Positions 6,743 through 61,837 of a stretch of 64,000 nt of DNA are shown here, in pieces. The DNA lies in the IMG/VR virus record IMGVR_UViG_3300040801_002079, positions 62,001 to 126,000 of that record. The stretch is one strand, 5' to 3'. The notes below the pieces were generated by a model. That model ran no database searches and was not told the DNA's origin. It saw only the letters and a list, made by a program, of their open reading frames with translations. A program made the translations under genes and the position numbers. The first letter of the stretch is position 1. Every line of letters begins with the position of its first letter.

Positions 6743-6842
6743 CAAACTGTTCCGTGGTTTCAATGTAGGGATATTATAACAGATTGTAAGGAAGAAGTAA
6801 AGTGGTGGGCCGTGTAGGGATCGAACCTACAACCTACCGATT

Positions 6843-7612
6843 CACGTTTGTGTGCATTTCTACACTCCGTGGACTATATCACCACCCTCGTCATTAACGT
6901 TAGGGTGCGGGTCGCTCTAGCTGGTCATTAAGGGGACTTTACCCCTCCAGTAGTCTCTGCACCTTCCTAGAGTGTACTCTAGGCTTGGCTCAAGGTTTTC
7001 ATAGTAACCCATACTTTCTTGCCCATTTTCGTGCTCCATTGTCGCTGACATTATATTTCCTTCCTATGGCTAACCATGAAAGGTGATTCATGTCTTGCTT
7101 CAATTCGCCCTTAGTGGGCTTTGTTTTCCCTCTTTGCTGCTGGTATTTTAACTCTTTATACTTACCAGCACATTCTTTCGAACAGGTGTGCTTCTGCTTT
7201 GCCTGTAGAGTTTGAAAACAAATCTCACAGTATGTCGGTTCGGTTACCTTAGAGTTCCCTGAATTCAACCCGTTCCTTTCATAACTTTCGTGTATGAAGG
7301 CACCAGTATCAATCCAGTTATGTATTTTAACATGGTCTCCCCGACTAAGAACAATGAGATTCTCACTCCTGTTATTAGATCGGTTACAATCAAGATGATG
7401 AACAACTTCATTACTTTCTAGCTGTCTACCTAGATTGGATTCCACGACAAGAATGTGTTCGTAAACCCATCCCTTCCAGTTATCACAATCCATACTTGAT
7501 TGATAATCAGGTCTATACAACAACCTGTAACCATTTAAATACCGAACTGTCTTTTTACTTGTATCCATATGACTATTTATATCATATTCGAACCAAAGAT
7601 ACAAGTTTTTTG
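6843..7612 (-). mobile_element. Group I intron (IC3-like) in the tRNA anticodon loop, carrying an HNH gene
   Basis: Inserted after exon U, ends in G; P (GGGTTGAATTCAGGGAACTC), Q (AACCTTGAGCCAAG), R (GTGCAGAGACTA) and S (GATATAGTCC) elements present. Confidence 0.92.
6999..7568 (-). CDS. Intron-encoded HNH homing endonuclease with C-terminal Zn-finger and HTH
   Basis: YEHILV...EVVHHLDCNRSNN..ENL...H...H; CEIC..CSKEC; WLAIGRKYNVSDNGARKW; TATAAATA at 7574-7581. Confidence 0.9.
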   Translation of the reverse strand: MDTSKKTVRYLNGYRLLYRPDYQSSMDCDNWKGWVYEHILVVESNLGRQLESNEVVHHLDCNRSNNRSENLIVLSRGDHVKIHNWIDTGAFIHESYERNGLNSGNSKVTEPTYCEICFQTLQAKQKHTCSKECAGKYKELKYQQQRGKTKPTKGELKQDMNHLSWLAIGRKYNVSDNGARKWARKYGLL

Positions 7613-7902
7613 ATGAGTCGGTTGCTCTAACCAATTGAGCTAACGGCCCTTTACTTCAAAAGTAATTCTACCACAATGATGTTACTATTTCAACTTGGTA
7701 TTTGGTTTGACTCCACCACCCGTTCCGGTGCCACCACCAGTTCCATCGGCTTTATCATTCTTGGCTTTAACAACTCTCCAAGCAACAAATCCAACAAATA
7801 AAACAACAATTCCTGCTACTAGATATGTTTCCATGATTATATCCTCCTTTGAGGGTATTTATCCCCCGAATGATCGGGGGATTATCATGGTCCAGTGTTT
7901 GA

Positions 7903-8607: not shown

Positions 8608-9513
8608 TCATTCATTGATAATTTCCTTGATTTTCCGCAGTTTATCGGCAGCAACCTGTTCGCTACCTTCCAAGTTGAAGTAGGCTGAGAGTGACCCATA
8701 GCGGGCTTCCAAGCAACTCATCAACAGAGGTTTTAGTTTATCATACTGTGGCAGCAGGGGCAAGGTGCTGTTAATATAAAGCGTATCCAGATCGGCTTGA
8801 CGCTTCTCAAACCATGATTCCAACTGCTCCAGAGTCCACTCACCGTTACGAACATCCTTCAGGAGTTCACGATTGGCTTCCAGATCAAGATCACCCGTTG
8901 AGAGCACCATTTCACACTGTTGAACCAGTCTTACGACATGATAGGCAAATTTGACATCATATCCAAACTTTGCAATAGTGTCTTTACGTTTACCAACAGG
9001 GTCTTTAGTGCGAAGCTTACGCAACTGGCTGTATGCATACCCTGACAGTTTCTTCTGGATACCACGATGAAGGAACAATCTACGGTTCTCACGCATAATG
9101 TCCCCAACCTCGTCAGAATGGACTACACACCGTTCAGGGACGAACAGGGAGTCGATCATGTTAGGATTGTTATCCGCACACAGCTTGAAGTAGTTGACGA
9201 TATTGTAAAGGGCAATGTCATATTCCTTACCCGTGTCCTCGTCAATGATGTGATGCTTTTGAACAACATCAATCACTTGGGGCTGAGGACCGAAACCGGG
9301 AATGTGACCAGCAGCATGAGGGAACACCATGTCAATGGGTGGAACAAATGCACCGTAGACATCGACATCAGAACCCATGTTAGAGACACCATAGGCAAAT
9401 GATCCCATGATGACCTCGTAACACGTTTCTTTAACAAACGGCTTCCACGGGGGCAGGAGTTCTTTCTTCTCCAGCTTCCGTACAATGCTTCCTCTGTCTT
9501 TTCCTGATGACAT
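8608..9513 (-). CDS. Pol-beta superfamily nucleotidyltransferase (RlaP/Nuc-transf type)
   Basis: GSFAYG....SDVDVYG, NPN, GYDVKFAYHVVRL and L.DVRNG motifs. Confidence 0.88.
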   Translation of the reverse strand: MSSGKDRGSIVRKLEKKELLPPWKPFVKETCYEVIMGSFAYGVSNMGSDVDVYGAFVPPIDMVFPHAAGHIPGFGPQPQVIDVVQKHHIIDEDTGKEYDIALYNIVNYFKLCADNNPNMIDSLFVPERCVVHSDEVGDIMRENRRLFLHRGIQKKLSGYAYSQLRKLRTKDPVGKRKDTIAKFGYDVKFAYHVVRLVQQCEMVLSTGDLDLEANRELLKDVRNGEWTLEQLESWFEKRQADLDTLYINSTLPLLPQYDKLKPLLMSCLEARYGSLSAYFNLEGSEQVAADKLRKIKEIINE

Positions 9514-13851: not shown

Positions 13852-14952
13852 TTACACATCGTCATTATCCTCCACAAACTGCTTGAAGTTCTTTACGAGC
13901 ATTTCCTCGTAATCGACAGTACCACCGGTAAACAAACGCATGGCACAATTGAATTCCATTCGGTTCAAGTCATTCTGTCCCTTGATTGCATAGGACTTGC
14001 GATCTAAATGCTTGTTTTCCTTATGGAAGCTTTCAACAGAGTGTACCATAGAATTCAATGCATGTCCAGCAATTCGCTCCATTTCCTCAATTCGATTCAG
14101 AGTGTATGCATCATCATGGAACAATGAACGCAGATCATCGGTAGCACCACGAACAGCAACCTCAAACAATCGACGGTTCGACTGGATTGAATCCTTTGCA
14201 CGATGTAGACTAAAGTATTCCTCGGTCTTGATCTTGATACGTTGACCACTTCCCAGACCCATAATGAACCCTTCAATACCCTTCATGGTGGGAATTTCGG
14301 CAGCAAATGACACAGAATCATCTACCATATGGGTATGATCCTCCACCATGTACTCATGTCCGAAGATTTCATAGAGAAGATCATAGTCCCAATAACTCAA
14401 GTCGGAGTTATTACGGACAGCAAGCACACGCAGTTCACACTCCTGATAAGGGAGCACGATACGATTCTTTGGAGAAGTATACTCCATGATGACAGTAGAA
14501 TCTTCAGATGCAACACGCTGCACCATGTCACGGAAGTATTCATCCTTGTTAAGAAGGTTGGTTGCTTCCAATGCTTGATCGGATGCGATAGCAGTCTTGG
14601 ACTTCAGGCACAGCATGTCCTCATGAAAGAAGGTGCTGATTAAAGAACCATCACGCTTTTCATGAACAAACCGGACATCGGATAAGTCCAAGTTCATGGT
14701 CATTGGATTCTCGTTCAAGTTAAAGAACTTCTCTAACGGTGCTGAAACAAGTTCAACGTCGGCACCGTCAACACGAAACATGTGACCACGACACTCAAGG
14801 GCATCTGGCTCAAGGAAATCAGTGTAAGATGCTAACCGGTAAGTGAACACACGATAAAGCACTCCGTTGATGTTGTGGTCAACGAAATAGAATGCTTCAT
14901 TGACATCAACCAATCGCATTAGGTTGTTATAAAGTTCTTGTACTCGGTTCAT
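13852..14952 (-). CDS. rnlA: RNA ligase 1 (T4 RnlA family)
   Basis: LECRG, PLEKFFNLNEN, motif I KRDGSL, EYTSP.NRIV, EGF, KIK...Y..LH. Confidence 0.92.
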   Translation of the reverse strand: MNRVQELYNNLMRLVDVNEAFYFVDHNINGVLYRVFTYRLASYTDFLEPDALECRGHMFRVDGADVELVSAPLEKFFNLNENPMTMNLDLSDVRFVHEKRDGSLISTFFHEDMLCLKSKTAIASDQALEATNLLNKDEYFRDMVQRVASEDSTVIMEYTSPKNRIVLPYQECELRVLAVRNNSDLSYWDYDLLYEIFGHEYMVEDHTHMVDDSVSFAAEIPTMKGIEGFIMGLGSGQRIKIKTEEYFSLHRAKDSIQSNRRLFEVAVRGATDDLRSLFHDDAYTLNRIEEMERIAGHALNSMVHSVESFHKENKHLDRKSYAIKGQNDLNRMEFNCAMRLFTGGTVDYEEMLVKNFKQFVEDNDDV

Positions 14953-14954
14953 TG

Positions 14955-15131
14955 TTATACGTCTTTTATCTGATGCTTCCCACAACGTTCACACGTTCTC
15001 TCATGTGCTAGCACTTTATCAATCACCACTTTCTCCGGTTCACCACACCATGCATAATGTATGGTCTTTTTGAACAACTGGGGGGCAGAAAACTTTCCCC
15101 ACTTGTGGATTCCAAATGTACAAAGGTTCAT
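14955..15131 (-). CDS. Small Cys/His protein (C..GIHKW...C.RCG)
   Basis: 58 aa, hand-translated, below the ORF track cutoff; early-type promoter upstream. Confidence 0.55.
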   Translation of the reverse strand: MNLCTFGIHKWGKFSAPQLFKKTIHYAWCGEPEKVVIDKVLAHERTCERCGKHQIKDV

Positions 15132-19835: not shown

Positions 19836-20498
19836 TTAGAGATAGGTAAGACTTTTGATCCCATTGGAAACAGGGGCATGACGTAAATCCTGATAGAAGG
19901 AAAGCTGTTCAACCGTCTTGCGTCCATTCATGAAAGCAACCCACTCATCCCTCTTGATGAGGAACAACTTACCAAGGGTGTTCTTGCGTCCACGCATGTA
20001 GCGGGAAGAAAGGCGTTTCGGAAAACGATGGTAACCCGTTTCCAAATCCTCAACCTGACCATTGTTGACCAGCACCAGTCTCCACGGCTGGATTTCAACC
20101 TTACGGGCATTACCAGCAGAAGAGGCAGAGGGGGCTTTAACACCCACCTTACGGGCAACACGCTTCCATTCTGCACCATGCGGGGCAACCTTGCGAACCC
20201 ACTTGCGACCCGTCCAACGACGAGCAAAGAAATCTTCACGCTTACCGGCATCCACATATTCTTCGTAATGCAGGGCATGGGCAATCTCGTGGCGAATGGT
20301 GTTGACCACATCTTCCTTCGAATCGTGATCCACACGCTGACGGGAAATGGACAGTCTTTTTGCATTGTAGTTGCACAGACCATGACGGGACTTGGCATTG
20401 TCAACCTTGAACGTCCATCCCTTTTGCACCAAACCCCATGCATTCATTTCAGCAATGGCAAGGGCAACGACATCTGAGTAAGTGGAAAACTGGGACAT
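19836..20498 (-). CDS. SprT-like zinc metalloprotease
   Basis: R.GLC.Y, TIRHEIAHAL, HGAEWKRVA. Confidence 0.85.
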   Translation of the reverse strand: MSQFSTYSDVVALAIAEMNAWGLVQKGWTFKVDNAKSRHGLCNYNAKRLSISRQRVDHDSKEDVVNTIRHEIAHALHYEEYVDAGKREDFFARRWTGRKWVRKVAPHGAEWKRVARKVGVKAPSASSAGNARKVEIQPWRLVLVNNGQVEDLETGYHRFPKRLSSRYMRGRKNTLGKLFLIKRDEWVAFMNGRKTVEQLSFYQDLRHAPVSNGIKSLTYL

Positions 20499-20562: not shown

Positions 20563-21177
20563 CTACTTGGAGTAAATTTTATATCCCTCTGTGCTCTTGT
20601 CGATGTTATATCCCTTGTTCTCAAGCTTGGGAATGCGTTGAAATCCACGGGATGTCTTGGAACCGTGCATGGCAAAGTCCATAATGTTATCATCACTCAG
20701 GTCACCACCACCGAATTCCTTTTCAAAGAACTCAGTGACAGTAGGGTCTTTGCGTTCCAATGCCTTCTTGAATGATGTGAAGATGTCTTTGTTGCGAGTG
20801 ACATGTATATTACGTTTTGCTAATCCATGCATGTTCTTAAGGATTTCATCTTCAACATTGTCCGGGACAACATTCAAAACAAAGCAGGAGAGTCCCACAT
20901 CAAACGTGTCATCAGGGAGTTTATTGGATACGCCTTCCCATCCATCGCAGTCAGTTCCATGGTAGGGATCATAGGTGTATACCTTAACCCCTCTATCACG
21001 CAACCATTTAGCGTTACGCCCCGTTTTACCAGCACCATAGTCCAACACCTTCATTCCATCCGTTATGTCGTTCTGGAGGAACAGGTGGCGTACAGCAGGG
21101 GCTACACCGGCTGAGATGGATGTACCACCCTCTTCAAGTGGTTCACCTTGGTATACTTTTAGGTCTTTGAGTTTCAT
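20563..21177 (-). CDS. Class I SAM-dependent methyltransferase (late, N-terminally tagged)
   Basis: VLDYGAGKTGRNA, YDPY, FD.....FVLNVV; TATAAATA-N5-ATG. Confidence 0.82.
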   Translation of the reverse strand: MKLKDLKVYQGEPLEEGGTSISAGVAPAVRHLFLQNDITDGMKVLDYGAGKTGRNAKWLRDRGVKVYTYDPYHGTDCDGWEGVSNKLPDDTFDVGLSCFVLNVVPDNVEDEILKNMHGLAKRNIHVTRNKDIFTSFKKALERKDPTVTEFFEKEFGGGDLSDDNIMDFAMHGSKTSRGFQRIPKLENKGYNIDKSTEGYKIYSK

Positions 21178-21384
21178 GCATGTATTTATAAATCCGTGAT
21201 CGACACAGTATAGCACAAATTAACTTTGTGTCAAGCTTGATAAATAAAATTACATGTGATAGGATATCAGAATGCGAAATCATAATTTATTACGAAAGGC
21301 TATAACATTGAGAAGTACAGAAACGATTATAAACAAAGAAGGCTTCATTGAGTATGAAGATTGATCCCATCAATCCTTAGTTAC

Positions 21385-21476
21385 GTTGCAGTGGCAGAGT
21401 CTGGTTATGCGCTGGATTGCAAATCCAGTTAGTGCTCGAAAGGGCCACGCGGGTTCAAATCCCGCCTGCAACTCCA
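21385..21476 (+). tRNA. tRNA-Cys(GCA) with an atypical long variable arm
   Basis: GTTGCAG/CTGCAAC acceptor, U73, CCA; CTGGA-TTGCAAA-TCCAG anticodon arm; about 20 nt variable region. Confidence 0.88.
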
Positions 21477-29759: not shown

Positions 29760-32158
29760 TTGTTTTCTCCTGTGTTGATACTAACGTTAGCGTAGTCAAT
29801 CACCGCTTTCTGGAACTCTTCTTTCTCACCTGAATACCACGGGGAGGAAACGTGATCCAGAAGTTTTAATTGACTGTTTACATTATCCACCATTTCGGTG
29901 TATTTGTCAACCGTTTCGGCAACAAAATCCGAGGGTTCTGGCAGATCAGAGTCACCCATGAAGCGCACCAATGCTTGAATTGCTTCGAACTTGGCTGACG
30001 GGTAACGCTTGTTAAAAAGTTTCTTAAAGCGAATCAGGGTGCGAACAGGATGGTTCTCATCCAAACGATCAAACTCTTCTTCGCTTACGGATTCGATTCG
30101 GGAAACAACTTTGGATTCACGAATCTTTTCACGAACCGCAATCAGGTTATTACGATTAACCAAATCAACCGGAACTTCCACATTCTCTCGCAGTTCCTTG
30201 ATCAAGTCCTGAATAGGCTTGAAACCGTATGTCAGGGCTTTATCGTACCGTGCGCGAGACAGGGCAAGGATAACCGTATTATCGTGGTCAAAATCCATCT
30301 CACTGTTCAGGTAGTGCTGGATGAATTGCAGATCGTCATATTCCAGACCTTCGATTTCGCACCTGTGCGTTTGGATAATGTACGCATCAGTATCAATCTT
30401 GGTCAGCGGAGTGTAGACATCCGTCCAGTACTTAGTAGAACCAAAACTGTGCTTCTCATGCTTGAACATCCGAGCAACAGGCGTGGTATTCGAACCGTAT
30501 GCAACCGTGCTGATGTTCTTGGGCAGTTCGATACTGGACAGGTAAACCAGTGTCAGATTATCATCGACAACCTCTTCCAGCATTTCCAGTGCATCATCAT
30601 CGTAGGTATCCAGAGTCAGCACTTCGCTACCTTGCAGACCATTTTCTTCTAAGTAGAACTTGATCTTTTTCAGGAACGAGTAACTATTGTCCCTGATGAA
30701 AACAATCCTGCTCTCAGTAGGGTTAATGAAAACATCACTGTTCAGGCGCGAGGTTTTACCATTGTGCTCATTGTACTCTGACCAGCGCAGTTTGTACTGG
30801 CGGTAGTGACCGTGGTTGGCAAGCTTCGTTTCCACGTTACCCTGATCATCTTCAATGTCAATCCATTTCAGGGAAGTGTAGTCACCCCAACCCGTGAGAG
30901 GCAGAGAGATAGCATTCTTGCTGTAACGGAAATTCGGATTTCCGACCATCTTGCGAACACGCTTCGATGACAGGTCAACAATGCTGAAATTGCGATTCAG
31001 GAAAACGGCTTTCTCATAGTCCGTCATAGAATCATCGTCAATGGAATCCAGCACGTAACCCGTGTACTCATCCATCGCTTCACGTTCACGTTCCTGAATC
31101 TTGGCAATCGTATCATCGTCGTACTGCAAATCCTCACGGGAGGCAGTAACCATGACTTCACCAATGTCAAACCGTGCAACCAGATTCTGCTGGAACAGGT
31201 TATTGCTCAGGTAACGAATGTTGTACGCATTATTACCAACGCAAGCGAATCCCTTGTTCCACGAATCACTGTCCAAATCCTCTTCGAACAGGATGAAGTG
31301 TTCACCCTTGTAAGCAACCTTCGGGAACTCCACTTCATCGTTCAACACGACAGGCAGGGGATCAAAGTACTTCAACTGATCCACAATCGCTTTCTTGAAC
31401 GTATGGTAGTCATCGGGAGCAACGGCAATCTTCACTTCCAGACCATTGTCCTCATCAGTATCAACCGTCATCATCAGATTGATTTGCGGCATACCGTGTT
31501 CGTTGGTCAGAATGTTGTAGACCCGCTTGATTCCATTGTACCGATTAGTAACAATGAAGTTATCGGTGTAGGCAAGCGGAGTCTTTGAACCGAGTCCAAA
31601 GGCACCCGTGAAGTCATTCGACTGTTCCTTCGTAGAACGAAAGTAGGTGCTGTAGAGAACCAACGTATCGTCAAACTCGACTGCAACGTCCTTACCGGAG
31701 AAGTCACCGGGAACACGCAGAACCGTTTGCTTGTTGGTATTGTCATACAGGATGGCACCAATGTTAACCGTCTCAGTTTCACCGAGAACGACCATGTTGA
31801 TACCTTCGATTTCCTTGCGGATATCACCGTCAATGAAGATGGTGGATTCACCTTCGTGCTCATTGACAATGTTAGCATTGTGCTTGAAGTAGCGCAGACC
31901 CGTACCGAAATCCTTCACTTCAAAATGAGGATCAAAGGCAGACGGGCAGGATACTTCGAACGGTACTTCCGGCTTACCAGCGGCGATATGTGCATCGTAA
32001 GCATTGGAGCACAGTTCACGAACAATCGTGGATTCGATTTCGGAGTACATTCCACTGGACAGAACGTTAAAGGCTTTACCGTTCATATCAATGCTGAAAT
32101 CGACATTGATGCTCATTCCAGCAGACTGTACAGACTTGGCTTGTGTATTGAGTTTCAT
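29756..32158 (-). CDS. rIIA: rIIA protein (GHKL ATPase N-domain)
   Basis: KAFNVLSSGMY...VRELCSNAYDAH, DFGTGL, STK..SN.FTGAFGLGSKTP.AYTD; ATGA-coupled to rIIB. Confidence 0.95.
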   Translation of the reverse strand: MKLNTQAKSVQSAGMSINVDFSIDMNGKAFNVLSSGMYSEIESTIVRELCSNAYDAHIAAGKPEVPFEVSCPSAFDPHFEVKDFGTGLRYFKHNANIVNEHEGESTIFIDGDIRKEIEGINMVVLGETETVNIGAILYDNTNKQTVLRVPGDFSGKDVAVEFDDTLVLYSTYFRSTKEQSNDFTGAFGLGSKTPLAYTDNFIVTNRYNGIKRVYNILTNEHGMPQINLMMTVDTDEDNGLEVKIAVAPDDYHTFKKAIVDQLKYFDPLPVVLNDEVEFPKVAYKGEHFILFEEDLDSDSWNKGFACVGNNAYNIRYLSNNLFQQNLVARFDIGEVMVTASREDLQYDDDTIAKIQEREREAMDEYTGYVLDSIDDDSMTDYEKAVFLNRNFSIVDLSSKRVRKMVGNPNFRYSKNAISLPLTGWGDYTSLKWIDIEDDQGNVETKLANHGHYRQYKLRWSEYNEHNGKTSRLNSDVFINPTESRIVFIRDNSYSFLKKIKFYLEENGLQGSEVLTLDTYDDDALEMLEEVVDDNLTLVYLSSIELPKNISTVAYGSNTTPVARMFKHEKHSFGSTKYWTDVYTPLTKIDTDAYIIQTHRCEIEGLEYDDLQFIQHYLNSEMDFDHDNTVILALSRARYDKALTYGFKPIQDLIKELRENVEVPVDLVNRNNLIAVREKIRESKVVSRIESVSEEEFDRLDENHPVRTLIRFKKLFNKRYPSAKFEAIQALVRFMGDSDLPEPSDFVAETVDKYTEMVDNVNSQLKLLDHVSSPWYSGEKEEFQKAVIDYANVSINTGENK

Positions 32159-33291
32159 ATGACCTTCCGTGTAAAGGTTAATCTCTAAATGTGGATACAT
32201 TATAGGTGATATCGTATCCAATGTCAAGTGCTTAGTGAAACTTTTTTTAAACTAGATTTCGGGCTTCCATTTCATCGATGATGTTCTGGTACAACTGGAA
32301 CACCTCTGGGGGCGGAGTACATTCTTCACACATAGAGTTTAGGGTGCCTTCCACACTCTTGTGCATCATTTGTAAATCTTCATCCGCAAGTTCTGATAGT
32401 ATTATAGGACTACCTTTCTGCATTGTCAAGGTACTCGTTTCCAGAGTCAACCAATAAGTTTACCACATTTTTACTGATCATGTCAAATATCGTACTGAAC
32501 TCATCTTCCTTGGTTTGCTCTGGTACAGCCGCAAGAGATGGATTACATAGGGCAAACTCCAGAAGCATACGAGATTGAACAGCAGCAGCATCCTCAGCGT
32601 GTTTTCGCATGTTGGCTCGTATGGCATCAACATCCGCTTTATGTTCGCTTAGACGTTGCTCCAGAAATAATTCGAATTGTTGTACTTTCTTATCCCAAGG
32701 GTTCATAATGTTATAGTTATCCTTTCAGTACTCTTATTTATAGAAATCAGGACAACAAGTTAACTTTGGGAACAAACTCAATCATATCCATGACAGTGTA
32801 TGCTGTATCCCATTCTTCTGGCATTGGGAGAGTCGGGATCACTTCATCGATGTACAGACCGACATCTGGACGATAGGGTTCAAAGTTAACATGATCCTGA
32901 ATGTCAGAAACAATATCATCAGCGTGATCCTCAGAGGTTGCTTCCACAATAAAGAAGGCAGGGACAATGTAACGTTTCGTAGACATCATAGTTTCCTCTA
33001 GATGACTTCACCGTCAAACACTTCCAGATCACGAATGAGCATGTTATCCATGGTCCAGTTGGTCATCAGGGAATTAACGTATTCAATGACTTTGGCATTG
33101 ACTGAGTTTAGATCAACAGTGCTATAGATGCAGCGGCTTGATCCCGAATCGGGGCGGCACATTACAAGGTAATCCAGATCACTAATGCGATAGCTTGCAA
33201 TGAGAGGTCCTTCATGCTGGTACTTCTCAAAGTGAAGCTTGGCTAGCATTTCATTCGTGCTGGGCATAATGTTCTCCGTGTAAAGAAAAAG

Positions 33292-33453
33292 TGGTGGTCA
33301 GGTAGGCTTCGAACCCTACATAGGACAATGTTGTCAAACGGTCTTGTGTTTCTGTTTCGGACGCATCCTACTACAGAAAGCTTTTCCTGTTTTCCTGTGA
33401 ATGTACCGGGGCATATCTTTGGGCAAATGATACATTCATTAAACTACTGACCA
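33292..33453 (-). ncRNA. tRNA-mimic RNA (acceptor and T arm with about 115 nt of unrelated internal structure)
   Basis: UGGUCAG-UAG start, GUAGG-GUUCGAAG-CCUAC-CUGACCA-CCA end; internal GAAUGUAUC/GGUACAUUC and UUUCUGU/ACAGAAA stems. Confidence 0.65.
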
Positions 33454-35121
33454 CTCCGATTCATGTACTATGTGGAAATCAATTGGCAAAATGCCTAGCA
33501 CATGAACCCAACGTTCTGGTGATGCTCCCCCGCCCTGTGCATGGGGTTAAAAAGGGAGCACCACACTCCATTCAATCAACTCGGGTGACAAACACCTCAC
33601 CGTCCTTGATAAAGGACATTATAGCATACTGGTACATATATGCAACCTCTCCATCACGTTCCCACTTCACAAGCGGAAACAGATCGGGGTCTTCAGGGTA
33701 ACGGTAGACACCATTGGCATCAACTTCACCACCCTTCATTTCAAACAAACCGAATCCATAGTTGTCATCAACCTGCTTCTGAAATGAATCTTCAGTCGTG
33801 ACATCAATCCAGTACGGAATCAATCCACATGCGTCCACCAGATACTCAGGTTCAACGTCACTGAAATGATCAGTCGGGTCAACCTCAAACCGATGCTGGG
33901 GATGAATAGACATAGTTGACATACTGTGTACTCCGTGTTTGTTTAACGATGAAACAATGTTACCACAGTGAAATCAGGATTGCAACCCTGCGGCACGTTT
34001 ATACAGATTGTACCCTGCTTTGTGATCGTTTGCATCACCATCACTTGACCATGTAAAATCATCATTAACCGCTTCCAATGCAAACAGGGTAGCGACCACG
34101 ATTTCATCATAGGGTCTACGGGCAGTCTTACAGAATTCTCCTCTGGCACCATCCCGGTAAACCACGAAGGTTTCATAACCATCGTCATCGACACCGTTGA
34201 AGCGAATCCTGTCTCCATCAATCATCGGAGGTTTGGGAACATCATATTCAAACTGTACCGGGACGCTTGAAGCATTGATGATCTTACCAGCAAGCTCAGT
34301 AGCTTTCTTCCACTGCTCGGGGGTAAACCCACGGTGACTCCAATAATGCGTGTAACCCATGTTAGTGCTCCTGTGTGTAATGAGAGAGGTCAGTATACTC
34401 CACTTCACGGGAAAATACAACCGCAATCAGTTCATCCAGATAACGAATATGCTTAATGAACCATGCAACATCCGATTCATTACCGGCTTGCTTATGTTCA
34501 ATAAGTCGTTCGACACAATGCATTTGATCCCTTCGTAAAACTCTCCAGAGATTCTCGGTATCAGTAGCATCCAGTTCGAATTCAAATTTCATCCAAACTA
34601 TCCGTATATGAATTAACGATAATAGCGATAATTTCTAAATGCATGTCAACCATCCATGGCTCAGGGGCATCTTTTATTTCTTCACCTACCGGCTCAACGA
34701 AGATATTACATCCATCAGTGAATTCAATAAAGAGATTAAGGTCTGATTCCATTTCAACTGTCTTAATCGTTTTACCTATCAAGTGCTGAAGGTCTGATTC
34801 GTGTGTTACTATTTTATGCATGGTTATATACCCATTTAGTTACAAGTTACTATCGAACCGTCCGTATTATACTTCACAGACGCACCAGAGGTGAACTGGA
34901 GGTACTGAACACCGTCTACACAGATTTCACTGTACCCTGTAAACTTGGCACCAACCCGTTCCATCTGACCACAACCGGACATTGCTACAGCAACAATGAT
35001 AATAGACGGTAGGAACATGAGCACCGGGAGGATACGACTAATGTATTTGTTTTCTTCTTGCATGACATTCTCCATTCAAATGTTGCGACATTATAACATG
35101 GAAAAAAGTTAGGGTAAAGGC

Positions 35122-35308
35122 TTGACAATGCTGGCAGCATTTGGTATTATACTAACCATCAAAGGAAGTTGAAGCAGACGCACCCAACAACCAACATATA
35201 TGTCTGCGAAGTAACCTACGAAGCACTGCGGTTGTCGAAGTCTATCTTTTTTATATAAAAGGAAACATCCGCTACTATAAGTATATCATAATAGCGGATG
35301 CATTGCAA
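35122..35308. ncRNA. Convergent-promoter small RNA module, copy 2
   Basis: TTGACA-17-TATTAT (+) faces TTGCAA-17-TATACT (-); GCAGAC/GTCTGC stem with a CCCAACAACCAACA loop. Confidence 0.55.
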
Positions 35309-51892: not shown

Positions 51893-53212
51893 ATGAAAAT
51901 TAATGAAGTCATGGGCGGTGAAAAACGAGCCGCGATAAAAAAGGGTACGAAAAGACCCATGGGACTTTCCCATAAAATCAATAAACAGTCTAAGAAACTC
52001 CAAAATAAAGCTGCTAGACGCAAAAGCAAGCGTGAATTGGAATTGTCTGAGTCTATAAATGTAATTCTATTTGAAAAACTAAAATTACTCCATGATAAGA
52101 AAAATGGAGTTCTCGCTGTGGCTTCCGACGAAACTGACCCCAAAAAGGCAAGCCGAGAAACGTATCGCAATAAAGATGCTCTTAAGTCTGCTGGTTTTAA
52201 ATGGTCTGGTGGCAACTGGACTATTAGTGATTCTGAGTTTGAAAAAGCCAAGTCTACATTAACCACAATTAACAAAACAGAATACCTGATTAATAAACTG
52301 GAAGATGTTCAGGAATTTATCGGTGATGCTACCAGTGACCCTAAGAAGGGGAGATTAACCGATATGATTCAGGGTTATATTGATGACTTGGCAAGTGCTA
52401 CAGATGAAGCCGCTGCTGCCGAAGAAATACGTAAGTATTTGGATTTCTTCTCTAATTTTTATCAGTACAGTTTCTTCAATAAGATTTTAATCTATATTCA
52501 GAACCCGGATGCAACTCAGGTTGCTAGCTATAAAAACTGGAGGAAAAAGCATCGTCAGGTTAAGAAGGGCGCTAAAGGTATGCAGATTCTCGTACCTATA
52601 TTCCCAAAGGGACGCAATCCAAAATATGATGATGTGGATGAGGATGATAAAGCTCAGCCAGTAAGATTCATTGTTGGCAGCGTGTTTGATATTAAGGACA
52701 CGGAAGCTATAGATGAAAGAGGTGAGGCTCCTGAAGAACCAGAGTGGTGGGGTGACAATACTCCAAGTGAAACGGCTAAAGACCTATTCAATTTGGTTGT
52801 CAAGGCAGCAGAAGCTGAAGGCATTGATATAACCTCTGATGATGCGAAAGGGGGAGAGAAGGGCTACAGTTCTGGTGGACATATTAACATCACATCGAAT
52901 GTAGAAGGTGTGGGTGAAGTTTCCACGATGGTTCATGAGTTTGCACACGAATTAATGCACTGGAAGGATCGCTCCAAGTTTTATGTTGGTGATGAGGCCG
53001 CTGGAAACAGGAAACTTAAAGAACTACAAGCCGAGAGTGTGTCATATGTTGTCCTGAAGCATTATAAGCTTCCAGTTGAGCATCACACTAAATATCTTGC
53101 TTTGTGGAGAGCAACCGGTGAAAAAATCAAGAACAACATTGAAACAATTTCAAAAGTTGCTCATTACATTATTAAAAAGATTGACGCTCAAGCAGAAAAG
53201 AAATCTAAATAA
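51893..53212 (+). CDS. ArdC-like ssDNA-binding domain plus zincin metallopeptidase (anti-restriction/polyvalent type)
   Basis: YSFFNKILIYIQNPDATQVASY..W....RQVKKGAKG..IL.P, VFDI..TE, HEFAHELMH, ELQAESVSY; TATAAATA at 51861. Confidence 0.88.
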   Translation: MKINEVMGGEKRAAIKKGTKRPMGLSHKINKQSKKLQNKAARRKSKRELELSESINVILFEKLKLLHDKKNGVLAVASDETDPKKASRETYRNKDALKSAGFKWSGGNWTISDSEFEKAKSTLTTINKTEYLINKLEDVQEFIGDATSDPKKGRLTDMIQGYIDDLASATDEAAAAEEIRKYLDFFSNFYQYSFFNKILIYIQNPDATQVASYKNWRKKHRQVKKGAKGMQILVPIFPKGRNPKYDDVDEDDKAQPVRFIVGSVFDIKDTEAIDERGEAPEEPEWWGDNTPSETAKDLFNLVVKAAEAEGIDITSDDAKGGEKGYSSGGHINITSNVEGVGEVSTMVHEFAHELMHWKDRSKFYVGDEAAGNRKLKELQAESVSYVVLKHYKLPVEHHTKYLALWRATGEKIKNNIETISKVAHYIIKKIDAQAEKKSK

Positions 53213-53248: not shown

Positions 53249-54055
53249 ATGACTACACATAGAGAACAATTTTTAAATCAATGCGCCTGTATTGATTTTG
53301 AAACAACGAGCTTAGAACCCGAAGAAGCTGAAATCATTGAGCAAGGCATAAGTGTATACGAAGATGGGAACTGGACTGTGGCAACTTCTATGTTGCACGA
53401 CTGTAAAGCTCCAGATGTTCCAGCCGAAGCATCCGCTGTAAACAACATTACGAAGCCAATGCTAAAAGGTTACGGCCCATTCAGTCTTGATAATTTCGGA
53501 TTATTATCTATAAAGCCTCATAGGAATATATTAATTTCACATAATGTCAAATATGACAGCATGGTATTAAAGAACTATGTTGATCCCGAGACATTTGAAG
53601 CACTTTCTTCTAATTGGCTATGCAGCTATCGTATGGCTAAAAAGTTATATGTTAATCGTCCCGAGTATAAATCATTAAGCCTTGCCTATCTACGGTACAG
53701 GCGCAAGCTATGTGAATTTGTTAAAATTCCAACCGAGCCTCACAGAGCGGGATATGATTCGTACATCAATGGCCTTCTTTTGGAGGACATTATCGACATA
53801 TTAGAAGAGGCTAATATATTGGATAAGGATAAACCATACTTTGGACAACTAAAAGATTGGCTGAAGCCACCTATAATGTTGGAATACATGCCCGGATTTG
53901 GTAAACATGCTGGGGAACGGTTGGACGAACTTGATTTCGGCTATTTGAAATGGGTGTTCGAAAATACCGACAGATGTGATGAGGATAGTCCCGAGTATGA
54001 TATTGATCTGGCAACTACATTAGCTGGATATATGGCAAAAGCTTATAAGGGTTGA
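53249..54055 (+). CDS. DnaQ-like DEDDh 3'-5' exonuclease (ExoX-like)
   Basis: IDFETT, SHNVKYD, HRAGYD; C-terminal FGKHAG......GYLKW. Confidence 0.88.
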   Translation: MTTHREQFLNQCACIDFETTSLEPEEAEIIEQGISVYEDGNWTVATSMLHDCKAPDVPAEASAVNNITKPMLKGYGPFSLDNFGLLSIKPHRNILISHNVKYDSMVLKNYVDPETFEALSSNWLCSYRMAKKLYVNRPEYKSLSLAYLRYRRKLCEFVKIPTEPHRAGYDSYINGLLLEDIIDILEEANILDKDKPYFGQLKDWLKPPIMLEYMPGFGKHAGERLDELDFGYLKWVFENTDRCDEDSPEYDIDLATTLAGYMAKAYKG

Positions 54056-61108: not shown

Positions 61109-61837
61109 ATGGATAAAACAAATTTAGGTGACCGCATGAAAGGCTATGAGGTTGTACCACGAGTGCAACTGATGCGCCGTACACCTGTTATTATGCGATT
61201 AGATGGAAAGGCGTTTCATACTTATACTCGTCATGAACTGTATAATGATGAAGGAGCGTTCAGTAATCGCTTAAAGGAAATCTTTGCTAACTCCGTGTTC
61301 AGCCTGATTCAAGAAATTCAGGGTGCCGCGTTTGCATATTTGCAATCAGATGAAGTTTCCATCTTAATTACTGATTGGAAAAAGTTAACGACCCACGCAT
61401 GGTTTAATTATAACACTCAAAAAATCACAAGTGTTGCGGCATCAATGTTCACATACTTCTTCAACGAAGAGGCTCGAATGAGAGGCATTGAGTCTCCAGC
61501 ATTTTTTGATGCAAGAGCGTTCAATCTGCCTTTTGAAGAAGTTACAAATTATTTCATCTGGCGACAACAGGATGCAACCAGAAATAGCATTCAGATGCTG
61601 GGAAGGGAATACTTTTCCCACAAGGAATTAAATGGTAAAAATGTGTCTAATATTCAGGACATGTTAATGAATGTGCATGGAGTAAACTGGAATGATATTC
61701 CGACTTGGCACAAGCGAGGGTTTGCTATTAAGTCATTTTTACATGAAGATCGTAGAACTTTTGGAATCGATCCCGAAATTCCAGTGTTTACAAAGAATAG
61801 AGGGTATATAGAAAAACATCTTGTATTTGAAGATTAG
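61109..61837 (+). CDS. Thg1-like tRNA(His) guanylyltransferase / 3'-5' polymerase
   Basis: LGDRMK.YE, RLDGKAFH, YLQSDEVS, FDAR, NYFIWRQQDATRNSI, NWND.P...KRG. Confidence 0.93.
   Translation: MDKTNLGDRMKGYEVVPRVQLMRRTPVIMRLDGKAFHTYTRHELYNDEGAFSNRLKEIFANSVFSLIQEIQGAAFAYLQSDEVSILITDWKKLTTHAWFNYNTQKITSVAASMFTYFFNEEARMRGIESPAFFDARAFNLPFEEVTNYFIWRQQDATRNSIQMLGREYFSHKELNGKNVSNIQDMLMNVHGVNWNDIPTWHKRGFAIKSFLHEDRRTFGIDPEIPVFTKNRGYIEKHLVFED

What the first reader, a model, noticed from the sequence alone, without database searches (positions are those of the whole stretch)
33292..33453. 162 nt tRNA mimic: intact acceptor/T-arm/CCA with D and anticodon arms replaced by novel domains
Seen: a 7 bp acceptor-like stem followed by UAG, a UUCGAA T-loop arm and terminal CCA. 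The middle has two long hairpins separated by ACAGGAAAACAGGAAAA. It is too short for tmRNA and has no group I core. Inference: the tRNA-like ends would recruit RNase P and 3' processing to release a stable RNA. It could be a decoy for anticodon nucleases or tRNA-sensing defences, and the tandem ACAGGA fits CsrA/RsmA binding motifs.
Basis: partly seen in the sequence, partly recalled or inferred. Interest (0 to 1): 0.78.

Follow-up and report, generated by a model that had tools for sequence, protein, structure and literature searches.

The report
Abundant tRNA-derived RNA in a jumbo phage
A giant phage from a microbial mat encodes a roughly 225-base RNA built on a tRNA skeleton; in RNA data from the same sample it is present while its neighbouring genes are not detected, and its two ends appear joined, so it is a real but so far unexplained phage RNA gene.

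Summary
The tRNA-like features are real. They lie on the minus strand at 33292-33453 and occur far more often than chance allows: the combined motif hits only this site and the three true tRNAs, against 0.03 hits per random 64 kb. It is not a tRNA, tmRNA, YrlA or any Rfam family.

Two metatranscriptomes from the source sample each hold one contig covering only 33289/90-33514 at depth about 22. The 3.2 kb of flanking genes has zero coverage. So a discrete RNA exists, but it is 225-226 nt: a 60-nt 5' leader hairpin, the 162-nt tRNA-like domain, and CU(U) after the CCA. Both contigs close on themselves with a 30-nt overlap at k=31, meaning reads join the 3' end to the 5' end. That indicates a circle, a head-to-tail multimer or a library artefact.

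The domain fits a class-II-like cloverleaf with a 41-nt hairpin inserted in the D loop and no anticodon loop. Its T stem is identical to that of an intron-split tRNA(CAU) in the same window.

The phage encodes a T4-type RNA ligase 1, RlaP and a Thg1-like enzyme. Only partial relatives were found, in salt-marsh metatranscriptomes; related phages lack the element. The closest analogue is T4 species 1 RNA (rnaC). Function is unknown.

The parts
33289..33514 (-). Whole RNA unit as found in the metatranscriptomes (225-226 nt). The 5' end is at 33514 (ACGUUGGG...). The 3' end is at 33290 or 33289 (...CCA-CU or ...CCA-CUU).
   Evidence: one contig per RNA run (X3 33289-33514, X4 33290-33514), depth 21-23, no differing letters, zero coverage on 31800-33288 and 33515-35200; the two runs hold 0.93 and 0.87 of the element's sampled words.
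33456..33511 (-). 5' leader hairpin: a 13-bp stem, an asymmetric internal loop and a GGC-loop-GCC tip. It directly abuts the acceptor stem.
   Evidence: Fold. In the salt-marsh relatives the GGC/GCC tip stem is kept while the loop differs (loose ends).
33447..33454 (-). Acceptor-like stem, 5' strand (G-UGGUCAG), followed by U8 A9 at 33446-33445.
   Evidence: (pair probability 0.97-1.0).
33441..33444 (-). Candidate D-stem 5' strand, GUUU.
   Evidence: The constrained fold is -41.4 against an MFE of -43.1 kcal/mol. Inferred, not shown.
33398..33438 (-). Hairpin 1: a 10-bp stem with a 21-nt loop that carries two GCCC motifs. It reads as an insert in the D loop.
   Evidence: probability 0.84-1.0. 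The two substitutions in the relatives, 33436 and 33430, both keep pairing (A-U to G-U, U-G to C-G).
33381..33398 (-). ACAGGAAAACAGGAAAAG. In the cloverleaf reading, 33397-33393 is the D-loop CAGGA (G18 G19 A21), 33392-33389 is the D-stem 3' strand AAAC, and 33388 is A26.
   Evidence: The stretch is conserved in the salt-marsh relatives down to 33381.
33349..33379 (-). Hairpin 2, in the position of the anticodon arm: a 7-bp stem, an internal loop, then 3 bp capped by UGCG. There is no anticodon loop. In the relatives this part is replaced by unrelated sequence.
   Evidence: probability about 0.45; similarity to X9 and X10 ends at 33381.
33324..33335 (-). Short hairpin GACA-ACAU-UGUC, in the position of a class II variable arm.
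   Evidence: probability about 0.5.
33302..33319 (-). T arm GUAGG(G)-UUCGAAG-CCUAC. Its stem is identical to that of the window's intron-split tRNA(CAU).
   Evidence: (probability 0.94).
33292..33301 (-). Acceptor 3' strand CUGACCA followed by CCA.
33286..33291 (-). Trailer C-UUUUU. The RNA ends after the first or second U.
33519..33564 (-). 11-bp hairpin between the stop codon of the upstream ORF and the RNA 5' end, ending 5 nt before that end. No sigma-70-like promoter is present here.
   Evidence: A role in 5' end formation is inferred.
13852..14985 (-). T4-type RNA ligase 1 (377 aa), the candidate enzyme for joining the RNA's ends.
   Evidence: Pfam PF09511 (5e-17) and PF20819 (2e-25). The link to the RNA is inference only.

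Best explanation
This is a gene for a stable, non-coding, tRNA-derived RNA of a 317-kb phage, read from the minus strand. The RNA is 225-226 nt. It consists of a 5' leader hairpin stacked against an expanded cloverleaf. The cloverleaf has a 7-8 bp acceptor stem, U8 A9, a D stem whose loop carries a 41-nt hairpin insert but keeps the GG, a long arm without an anticodon loop, a short variable-arm hairpin, a T arm, and an acceptor 3' strand with CCA. The RNA accumulates far above the neighbouring mRNAs. Its short single-stranded 5' and 3' tails face each other where the leader helix meets the acceptor helix, and a substantial fraction of molecules is joined 3' end to 5' end. I infer that this makes a covalently closed circle, sealed by the phage's own Rnl1-type ligase after the 5' end has been processed to a monophosphate. 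I further infer that the closed RNA resists exonucleases and presents the tRNA acceptor/T-arm and elbow surface without being decodable or chargeable, so it acts as a sink or decoy for a protein that recognises the tRNA body. That protein could be a host tRNA-targeting nuclease or a tRNA-processing or repair enzyme. Shown: the anatomy, discrete abundance, defined ends, junction reads, and the presence of ligase and repair genes. Inferred: circle rather than multimer or artefact, the ligase responsible, and the function. Graded confidence: a real expressed tRNA-derived ncRNA about 0.9; ends joined in vivo about 0.6; joined by the phage Rnl1 about 0.35; decoy or sink for a tRNA-binding protein about 0.3.
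For: Anatomy beyond chance.

Expression: searches show the RNA runs hold 0.19 of the words of a 1.1-kb stretch but 0.87-0.93 of the element alone. One search shows one contig per run on 33289/90-33514 at depth 21-23, with the 3.2-kb flanks at zero, which rules out DNA carry-over.

Closed cycle: X3's contig is 256 nt (226 plus 30 nt repeating 33485-33514) and X4's is 255 nt (225 plus 30 nt repeating 33290-33319). That is exactly a k-1 overlap for k=31, seen in two libraries.

Strand: the G-U pairs (U25-G49 in the window, G19-U55 in the relative) work only on the minus strand. The 3' end falls in a U run on the minus strand. The minus strand folds better (z -2.56 against -1.72).

Structure: both internal substitutions in the relatives keep hairpin 1 paired, and the relatives' further differences beyond 33478 map to loops of the predicted leader fold.

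tRNA descent: the T stem GUAGG/CCUAC and the trailer CCA-CUUU are shared with the window's tRNA(CAU). By my manual alignment, 27 of 33 non-acceptor core positions are identical to that tRNA, against 21 of 33 for tRNA-Gly. A distant relative carries a true tRNA-Leu in the same slot.

Ligase and repair context: Rnl1, RlaP, Thg1-like and RNase T-like genes. PMC7824862 describes these as the jumbo-phage tRNA repair set. RNA ligases are known to circularise small structured RNAs in archaea (PMC9014305).
Against: Contigs give no per-base depth, read counts or strand. The junction could be supported by as few as two reads per word and could come from reverse-transcriptase template jumping on a very abundant linear RNA. 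The junction differs by one U between the two libraries, which fits heterogeneous 3' ends or non-templated addition. No full-length homologue was found, so no covariation test was possible, and hairpin 2 is poorly determined. Related phages lack the element at this position, so it is not essential to the clade. The Rnl1 gene is 19 kb away, and no polynucleotide kinase gene was found in the window. No binding partner is known. The element has no anticodon loop, so classical anticodon nucleases may not bind it.
Confidence: 0.45

Rival explanations
1. The same tRNA-derived stable RNA, but linear in vivo. Its 5' end would come from processing downstream of the 33519-33564 hairpin, and its 3' end from termination or trimming in the U run after the acceptor/T-arm helix. 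The head-to-tail junction would then be a library artefact, from end-to-end template jumping or intermolecular ligation on an abundant RNA.
For: The junction differs by one U between X3 and X4, as expected for untemplated addition or ragged 3' ends. With no competing extension at true RNA ends, even rare junction words close a de Bruijn cycle. The 3' end lies in a U tract after a stable helix.
Against: All 30 junction words had to pass the assembler's abundance filter in two separate libraries at a mean depth of only about 22. That suggests junction reads are not rare. The ends are held next to each other by the fold, and the phage has an Rnl1 ligase.
Confidence: 0.3
2. A decayed tRNA gene: a duplicated phage tRNA that picked up insertions. 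It would still be transcribed and survive only because it is highly structured, with no function of its own.
For: Its T stem is identical to the window's tRNA(CAU) and its core resembles a tRNA. It is absent from related phages, which have an 84-aa ORF or other small ORFs in this slot. It has no anticodon loop.
Against: The 5' half, including the insert hairpin and leader, is 92-95% identical in RNA from unrelated salt-marsh samples, with pair-preserving changes, and is expressed there too. The inserts are well-folded hairpins rather than random sequence. It has its own leader and defined ends, and its abundance exceeds that of all neighbouring genes.
Confidence: 0.12
3. A cis-acting leader or attenuator of the downstream 89-aa gene. 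The tRNA-like fold would close a terminator-like helix before the U run, 22 nt upstream of the start codon, and the terminated leader would accumulate.
For: The RNA ends in CUUUUUCUUU, 22-24 nt before the AUG at 33267, and the Shine-Dalgarno GGAGA follows. Terminated riboswitch leaders often accumulate (general knowledge).
Against: No read-through coverage at all was seen on the downstream gene. The closest relative expresses the same downstream gene without this element. The 5' end is also sharply defined and is joined to the 3' end.
Confidence: 0.06
4. A CsrA/RsmA-titrating sponge RNA that works through its GGA motifs.
For: Two tandem CAGGA motifs lie in a probably single-stranded linker, and a third GGA sits in AGGAUG, which resembles the CsrA SELEX consensus (consensus from general knowledge).
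Against: There are only four GGA motifs in 226 nt, and none is in a hairpin loop in the predicted fold. The tandem pair is 8 nt apart, too close for one CsrA dimer to bridge. The first GGA is explained by the tRNA D loop. There was no Rfam hit to the CsrB or Rsm families at E up to 10.
Confidence: 0.04
5. A miniature tmRNA-like or otherwise chargeable RNA that enters the ribosome.
For: It has an acceptor/T-arm minihelix with an encoded CCA. One reading frame starting at GCC runs 17 codons to UAG UAG (direct reading).
Against: ARAGORN's tmRNA search found nothing even at relaxed thresholds, and Rfam found nothing. Position 3:70 is G-C, not G-U. No pseudoknots are predicted. The CCA is followed by CU(U) and joined to the leader in the observed RNA. 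An open frame of that length has roughly a 40% chance of arising at random.
Confidence: 0.03

Closest known systems
Bacteriophage T4 species 1 RNA (rnaC, 139 nt) and species 2 RNA (rnaD)
   Same: Both are phage-encoded, small, stable RNAs of unknown function. rnaC has an imperfect terminal stem, two long hairpins where the D and anticodon arms would be, and a T arm (CCGGG-UUCGAAU-CCCGG) directly next to the 3' strand of the terminal stem. It has no Rfam family. Its function is still unknown (PMC9697503, PMC3014915).
   Different: There is no detectable sequence or covariance-model similarity. T4 rnaC sits inside the tRNA gene cluster; this element is 11 kb from the nearest tRNA gene. This element also has a 60-nt leader retained in the RNA, an encoded CCA, a recognisable D-stem and GG core, and apparent end-joining. 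None of these features is known to me for rnaC.
YrlA-type bacterial and phage Y RNAs (partners of Ro60/Rsr)
   Same: These are non-coding RNAs of 100-200 nt with a domain that mimics the tRNA acceptor, D and T arms. They are found in phages as well as bacteria, and some are RNase P and CCA-adding substrates (PMC4201824). They are linked to RNA repair operons.
   Different: In YrlA the acceptor is a closed stem-loop, the RNA termini lie in a Ro-binding stem with a GNCGAA motif, and the genes sit next to Ro60. Here the acceptor is the open end, no such motif is in place, no TROVE ORF was found among the window's large ORFs, and Rfam gives no hit.
RNA-ligase-dependent circular small RNAs of archaea (C/D box sRNAs and others)
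   Same: These are small structured non-coding RNAs whose ends lie close together and are sealed by an ATP-dependent RNA ligase, giving circular forms detected by junction reads (PMC9014305, PMC2577357).
   Different: They belong to a different domain of life, use a different ligase family (Rnl3 rather than Rnl1) and are not tRNA-like. For this element, circularity rests on assembly topology only.
Phage tRNAs used as replacements or decoys against tRNA-cleaving defences
   Same: The phage invests in tRNA genes and tRNA repair enzymes. Phage tRNAs can act as supplements or decoys against nucleases, including ones that cut outside the anticodon (PMC13096335, PMC7824862).
   Different: Those are genuine, decodable tRNAs. 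This RNA has no anticodon loop, and tRNA finders do not recognise it.

Membership tests
tRNA | A 7-bp acceptor stem contiguous with a 5-bp T stem that carries a UUCRA loop | tested here: met
   The T loop has one extra G (an 8-nt loop or a bulge).
tRNA | An anticodon arm with a 5-bp stem and a 7-nt loop | tested here: not met
   Hairpin 2 is a long imperfect stem capped by the 4-nt UGCG.
tRNA | Recognised by a tRNA covariance model or by ARAGORN | tested here: not met
   Searches found nothing. ARAGORN forces a poor 'tRNA-Arg with an 84-nt intron' only at 80% thresholds.
tRNA | A D arm with a 4-bp stem and G18 G19 in the loop | tested here: inconclusive
   GUUU/AAAC with A14 A15 ... G18 G19 A21 is available at +1.7 kcal/mol but has only 0.04 probability in the ensemble.
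tRNA | Mature ends at the acceptor stem (RNase P 5' end, 3' CCA end) | tested here: not met
   The RNA contigs run 60 nt further 5' and 2-3 nt past the CCA. A processed sub-population cannot be excluded.
tmRNA | A tRNA-Ala-like domain with a G3-U70 pair | tested here: not met
   Position 3:70 is G-C in either register (direct reading).
tmRNA | A tag reading frame with pseudoknots, detectable by ARAGORN or Rfam | tested here: not met
YrlA / Y RNA | Encoded next to a Ro60 (TROVE) gene | tested here: not met
   No TROVE hit among the 19 ORFs of 180 aa or more that were scanned, plus one 150-aa neighbour. The immediate neighbours have no family at all. The rest of the 317-kb genome was not examined.
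YrlA / Y RNA | Termini in a Ro-binding stem and a closed 'acceptor' stem-loop (PMC4201824) | tested here: not met
   The topology is the opposite here, and Rfam gives no hit.
T4 rnaC-type stable RNA | A terminal stem plus an adjacent T arm, with long hairpins replacing the D and anticodon arms | tested here: met
   Compare.
T4 rnaC-type stable RNA | Sequence or structure homology to T4 rnaC | tested here: not met
   Model R1 does not hit the T4 tRNA region at E up to 10.
CsrB/RsmZ-type CsrA sponge | Many GGA motifs, mostly in hairpin loops | tested here: not met
   There are four GGA motifs in 226 nt, none in a predicted hairpin loop. No Rfam hit.
CsrB/RsmZ-type CsrA sponge | Binds CsrA | not testable with these tools
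   This needs a gel shift or pull-down.
Viroid-like / ribozyme-bearing circular RNA | Circular assembly in RNA data | tested here: met
   A 30-nt terminal overlap in both runs.
Viroid-like / ribozyme-bearing circular RNA | A self-cleaving ribozyme and no DNA template | tested here: not met
   No ribozyme family at E up to 10. The sequence is encoded in phage DNA.

The most novel reading that the evidence does not exclude
A DNA phage encodes a covalently closed circular RNA built on a tRNA scaffold. The phage's own anticodon-loop-repair ligase (Rnl1) would seal it, using a fold that presents the two ends like a nicked loop. The circle would be an exonuclease-proof, non-decodable tRNA mimic that titrates a host tRNA-targeting immune nuclease or another tRNA-body reader. 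That would be a new class of phage counter-defence RNA and the first natural substrate of a phage RNA ligase other than broken tRNA.
Probability: 0.2. Interest if true: 0.85.

Novelty: new variant of a known kind. Interest (0 to 1): 0.64.

Why it matters
Phage-encoded tRNA-like stable RNAs have been known since T4 species 1 RNA in the 1970s, and their function is still unknown. This element gives a second, independent example in a very different phage, with direct environmental evidence of high and discrete abundance. It also shows apparent end-joining, and its genome carries a full tRNA-repair set. If the circle is real, it connects phage RNA ligases to the biogenesis of a non-coding RNA rather than only to damage repair. 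It would also add a DNA-encoded class to the circular RNAs that metatranscriptome surveys now report and usually set aside. Finally, it gives a concrete candidate for testing whether tRNA-body mimics act against the growing list of tRNA-cleaving defence systems.

Tried and rejected
- **Standard detectors.** ARAGORN gave nothing on the window. On the excised element it gave nothing in intron mode at default thresholds and only a strained call at 80% thresholds. Rfam gave nothing at gathering or at E up to 10.
- **DNA homologues by blast.** blastn against 50,697 deposited phages found no match.
- **DNA homologues by pattern.** Five exact-pattern scans of IMG/VR returned only the window's own contig (and the rIIA protein scan).
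- **Metagenome and genome scans.** One JGI metagenome scan and one GTDB genome scan with the hairpin-1 loop returned 14 sites. On inspection all were chance matches with unrelated flanks, most of them in coding-like sequence.
- **Synteny.** I fetched homologues of the upstream neighbour on seven ENA or Logan loci and 79 IMG/VR loci. None carries the element by ARAGORN, blastn or the covariance model R1. ARAGORN covered L004-L010 and L028-L087 only; L088-L106 were searched with R1 alone. DNA of the closest relative (31.7-kb ENA contig) was not retrievable.
- **L029 match.** The only model hit (E 1.1) contains an exact 18-nt match, but it lies inside a Toprim primase ORF and I judged it a coincidence.
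- **Paralogues.** None in the window.
- **Promoter.** No sigma-70-like promoter upstream of the 5' end.
- **Descent from a specific tRNA by alignment.** Nothing beyond the generic T loop was shared with the Leu, Cys and Gly tRNAs. The tRNA(CAU) resemblance came from inspection.
- **Neighbouring proteins.** No Pfam or PHROG function.
- **Literature.** I found no description of this element or of circular tRNA-like phage RNAs.
Full report
**Where and what.** The window is part of IMGVR_UViG_3300040801_002079, a 316.8-kb phage contig from a microbial mat. It carries rIIA and rIIB. Its nearest deposited relatives by rIIA are jumbo phages such as XacN1, at about 34% identity, and it has no nucleotide match among deposited phages. 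The finding lies on the minus strand, in a 304-nt gap between two small minus-strand ORFs of unknown function: 33572-33922 (116 aa) and 32998-33267 (89 aa).

**Checking the observation.**
- UGGUCAG (33453-33447) pairs with CUGACCA (33301-33295), and G33454-C33294 can add an eighth pair.
- UA-G follows the 5' strand.
- A T-arm hairpin GUAGG-GUUCGAAG-CCUAC (33319-33302) runs straight into the acceptor 3' strand, followed by CCA (33294-33292).
- In between lie a strong 10-bp hairpin (33438-33398), the stretch ACAGGAAAACAGGAAAAG (33398-33381), a longer and less certain hairpin (33379-33349) and a short one (33335-33324).

Pair probabilities are 0.94-1.0 for the acceptor and T stem, 0.84-1.0 for hairpin 1, and only about 0.45-0.5 for the other two. 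To ask whether this exceeds chance, I scanned for a UUCRA-loop hairpin followed directly by a 7-mer that pairs with an upstream 7-mer carrying UA or UG. The window has four such sites: its three true tRNAs and this element. Composition-matched random 64-kb sequences average 0.03.

There are three blemishes. The T loop has one G too many. With a 7-bp stem there is no discriminator base before the CCA. Whole-molecule stability is only moderately better than shuffles (z -2.2).

**It is not a member of a catalogued family.**
- ARAGORN finds no tRNA or tmRNA. Only at 80% thresholds does it force a poor tRNA with an 84-nt intron that uses the same acceptor strands.
- Rfam 15 gives nothing at gathering thresholds, and nothing meaningful at E up to 10 on the local 500 nt. 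That covers the tRNA, tmRNA, YrlA, CsrB/Rsm and self-cleaving ribozyme families.

**A discrete RNA is present, with different ends from those predicted.** Two metatranscriptomic runs from the same sample as the window hold 19% of the sampled words of 32900-34000, but 93% and 87% of the words of 33285-33460. I laid four RNA runs on 31800-35200. Each of the two source-sample runs gives exactly one contig, identical to the window: 33289-33514 in X3 and 33290-33514 in X4, at word depth 21-23. Coverage is zero on the 1.5 kb to the left and the 1.7 kb to the right. The silent flanks exclude DNA carry-over. So the refutation test 'no discrete RNA' fails: the RNA exists and is far more abundant than the neighbouring mRNAs.

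The RNA is 225-226 nt rather than 162 nt. It starts 60 nt upstream of the acceptor stem (5' ACGUUGGG at 33514) and ends CU or CUU after the CCA, in the first bases of a U5 run. The 60-nt leader folds into its own hairpin, which directly abuts the acceptor stem.

**Strand.** Contigs carry no direction, but three things point to the minus strand:
- The G-U pairs in hairpin 1 (U25-G49 here, G19-U55 in the relative) would be A-C mismatches on the other strand.
- The 3' end lies in a U run only on the minus strand.
- The minus strand folds better (-64.0, z -2.56, against -61.2, z -1.72).

**The ends are joined.**
- X3's contig is 256 nt. Its first 30 nt repeat 33485-33514, and it then runs 33289-33514.
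- X4's contig is 255 nt. Its first 30 nt repeat 33290-33319.

A terminal repeat of exactly k-1 = 30 is what a closed cycle gives in a k=31 assembly. So all 30 words that span a junction from 33289/90 back to 33514 were present in both libraries. This means reads join the RNA's 3' end to its 5' end. Three readings fit: a covalently closed circle, head-to-tail multimers, or reverse-transcriptase template jumping on a very abundant linear RNA.

I lean towards a real joint, at about 0.6. The junction words had to pass the abundance filter at a mean depth of only about 22, and they did so in two libraries. The fold also places the 3-nt 5' tail and the 5-6-nt 3' tail face to face at the junction of two stacked helices, which is a favourable geometry for intramolecular ligation. 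The one-U difference between the libraries is a warning that ragged ends or untemplated addition are involved. Contigs cannot settle this.

**Ligase context.** The same window encodes several RNA-repair enzymes:
- a T4-type RNA ligase 1, including the C-terminal domain typical of T4 Rnl1 (13852-14985);
- an RlaP nucleotidyltransferase (8608-9513);
- a Thg1-like 3'-5' polymerase (61109-61837);
- an RNase T-like exonuclease (53249-54055).

The Aravind group's jumbo-phage survey describes exactly this set as the phage tRNA-repair apparatus (PMC7824862). Ligase-dependent circularisation of small structured RNAs is established in archaea (PMC9014305). That the phage Rnl1 seals this RNA is inference. 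It would need a 5' monophosphate, which fits two observations: there is no promoter-like sequence upstream, and an 11-bp hairpin (33564-33519) ends 5 nt before the 5' end, suggesting processing. I saw no polynucleotide kinase gene in the window.

**A tRNA skeleton with inserts.** A cloverleaf that adds a D stem G-U-U-U/A-A-A-C around hairpin 1 costs only 1.7 kcal/mol more than the MFE. In tRNA numbering it puts U8, A9, a 4-bp D stem, A14, A15, then hairpin 1 as a 41-nt insert, then C-A-G18-G19-A21, the D-stem 3' strand and A26 in their canonical places. After these come a long arm in the anticodon position capped by UGCG, a short variable-arm hairpin as in class II tRNAs, and the T arm. On this reading the first ACAGGA is the D-loop GG that normally docks on the T loop. 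That is a simpler account than a CsrA site.

**Evidence for descent from a phage tRNA.**
- While checking a stray T-arm motif, I found that the window holds a tRNA(CAU) gene split in its anticodon loop by a roughly 780-nt group I intron that encodes an HNH endonuclease. The 5' exon starts at 7649 and the 3' exon ends near 6800, both on the minus strand.
- Its T stem GUAGG/CCUAC is identical to the element's, whereas the other three tRNAs have GCGGG/CCCG(C/U). Both are followed by CCA-CUUU.
- By my manual alignment, 27 of 33 non-acceptor core positions are identical, against 21 of 33 for tRNA-Gly.
- In a distant relative (L048), a genuine tRNA-Leu(UAA) sits directly after the homologue of the 116-aa gene, in the same slot.

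Together these point to descent from a phage tRNA gene.

**Relatives.** I found no DNA homologue in IMG/VR, JGI metagenome contigs, GTDB genomes or deposited phages. Related phages do not have the element:
- The closest relative, whose neighbour genes are 75-80% identical, has an 84-aa ORF between the same two genes.
- Others have different small ORFs, or a terminator and promoter.
- 79 more distant IMG/VR loci give no hit with a covariance model of the element.

So the element is an accessory insertion in a variable slot.

Two salt-marsh metatranscriptomes from other studies do hold a relative as RNA. Their contigs of 155 and 163 nt match 33381-33478/88 with 5-8 differences, then diverge completely at 33381, where the anticodon-position arm begins. 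The conserved part is the leader from its tip onwards, the acceptor 5' strand, the D stem and hairpin 1, and the GG linker. The two differences reported away from the ends of the aligned pieces both fall in the hairpin 1 stem and keep pairing (A-U to G-U, U-G to C-G). The further differences I could place lie beyond 33478, in the leader's internal loop and tip loop of the predicted fold, while the GGC/GCC tip stem is kept. Three more differences near the piece ends are not reported by position. This is modest support for the fold and for selection, and it shows a modular build: a constant tRNA-core half and a swappable arm. It falls well short of a covariation test.

**What it most likely does.** With good support, this is a real, highly abundant, tRNA-derived, non-coding phage RNA with defined ends. 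With moderate support, its ends are joined in vivo. The function is inferred. It keeps the parts of a tRNA that proteins read from the outside: the acceptor/T-arm minihelix, and possibly the D-loop/T-loop elbow. It has lost the part that decodes, and in the joined form its CCA is not free. That favours a sink or decoy for a tRNA-body-binding protein, or a dedicated substrate or cofactor of the phage's RNA-repair enzymes. It argues against any role in translation.

A decoy for classical anticodon nucleases is unlikely because there is no anticodon loop. However, defences that cut tRNAs elsewhere exist; Septu, for example, cuts the variable loop of tRNA-Tyr (PMC13096335). The 8-bp acceptor with G-1 opposite C73 is the tRNA-His signature that Thg1-family enzymes read, and the phage has a Thg1-like gene. 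That is a lead only.

**Comparison with known RNAs.**
- The closest analogue in build is T4 species 1 RNA (rnaC). It has a terminal stem, two long hairpins and a T arm next to the 3' strand. Its function is still unknown after fifty years (PMC9697503, PMC3014915). There is no detectable homology between the two, and rnaC lies within the tRNA cluster.
- YrlA Y RNAs also mimic tRNA and occur in phages. They have the opposite topology and sit next to Ro60 (PMC4201824), and neither holds here.

**Verdict.**
- Observation: confirmed.
It is a stable tRNA-like RNA, but the predicted ends are wrong, the CsrA and anticodon-nuclease ideas are weak, and the D arm is expanded rather than replaced.
- Novelty: a new variant of the poorly understood class of phage tRNA-like stable RNAs. 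The apparent circularisation would be new if confirmed.

**Correction.** My early notes placed the 3' end one base off. The coordinates in this report follow: 33292 is the A of the CCA.

Noticed in passing
window 6800-7649 (-): A tRNA(CAU) gene is split in its anticodon loop by a roughly 780-nt group I intron. Rfam hits the intron core at 6850-7320, and the intron carries an HNH homing-endonuclease ORF (6999-7634). The 5' exon GGGCCGUUAGCUCAAUUGGUUAGAGCAACCGACUCAU starts at 7649, and the 3' exon ends ...GUAGGUUCGAUCCCUACACGGCCCACCA near 6800. ARAGORN missed it.
   Followed up: partly
window 8608-9513 (-), 13852-14985 (-), 53249-54055 (+), 61109-61837 (+): An RNA-repair gene set: an RlaP nucleotidyltransferase, a T4-type RNA ligase 1 with the Rnl1 C-terminal domain, an RNase T-like exonuclease and a Thg1-like 3'-5' polymerase. 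No polynucleotide kinase, RtcB, Ro60 or CCA-adding enzyme turned up among the ORFs of 180 aa or more that I scanned.
   Followed up: partly
window 21385-21476 (+): ARAGORN and Rfam call a 92-nt tRNA-Cys(GCA) with a 17-19-nt extra arm. That is unusual for tRNA-Cys, which is normally a class I tRNA.
   Followed up: no
window 33519-33564 (-): An 11-bp GC-rich hairpin sits directly after the stop codon of the 116-aa ORF and ends 5 nt before the RNA's 5' end. It has no U tract. It may be a processing signal or a 3' protective structure for the upstream mRNA.
   Followed up: partly
window 33268-33571; ENA contig in ERZ23498365 (no DNA available); L004 801-1593; L005 3333-3835; L048 4399-4483: The slot between the 116-aa and 89-aa gene homologues is hypervariable among related phages. 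It holds an 84-aa ORF, two ORFs of about 72 aa plus a terminator and promoter, a 113-aa ORF, a true tRNA-Leu(UAA), or, in the window, the RNA gene.
   Followed up: partly
L029 6715-6732 (+): An exact 18-nt match (GACAACATTGTCCTATGT) to the element's variable-arm hairpin and T-arm junction lies inside a 518-aa Toprim primase-helicase ORF, where it codes DNIVLCF. The expected number of such matches is about 0.002, and it is unexplained. I treated it as a coincidence.
   Followed up: partly
window 33334-33435 (-): A 33-aa basic ORF lies inside the RNA. Its AUG is buried in the hairpin 1 stem and it has no Shine-Dalgarno sequence. The U25-to-C change in the salt-marsh relative is synonymous in this frame, and the frame stays open in the 30 nt of divergent sequence that could be seen. 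This is not enough to suggest coding.
   Followed up: no
window 51893-53212 (+), 19836-20498 (-), 20563-21216 (-): There is an ORF with an ArdC-like N-terminal anti-restriction domain. A SprT-like protease and a methyltransferase lie next to the tRNA-Cys and tRNA-Gly pair.
   Followed up: no
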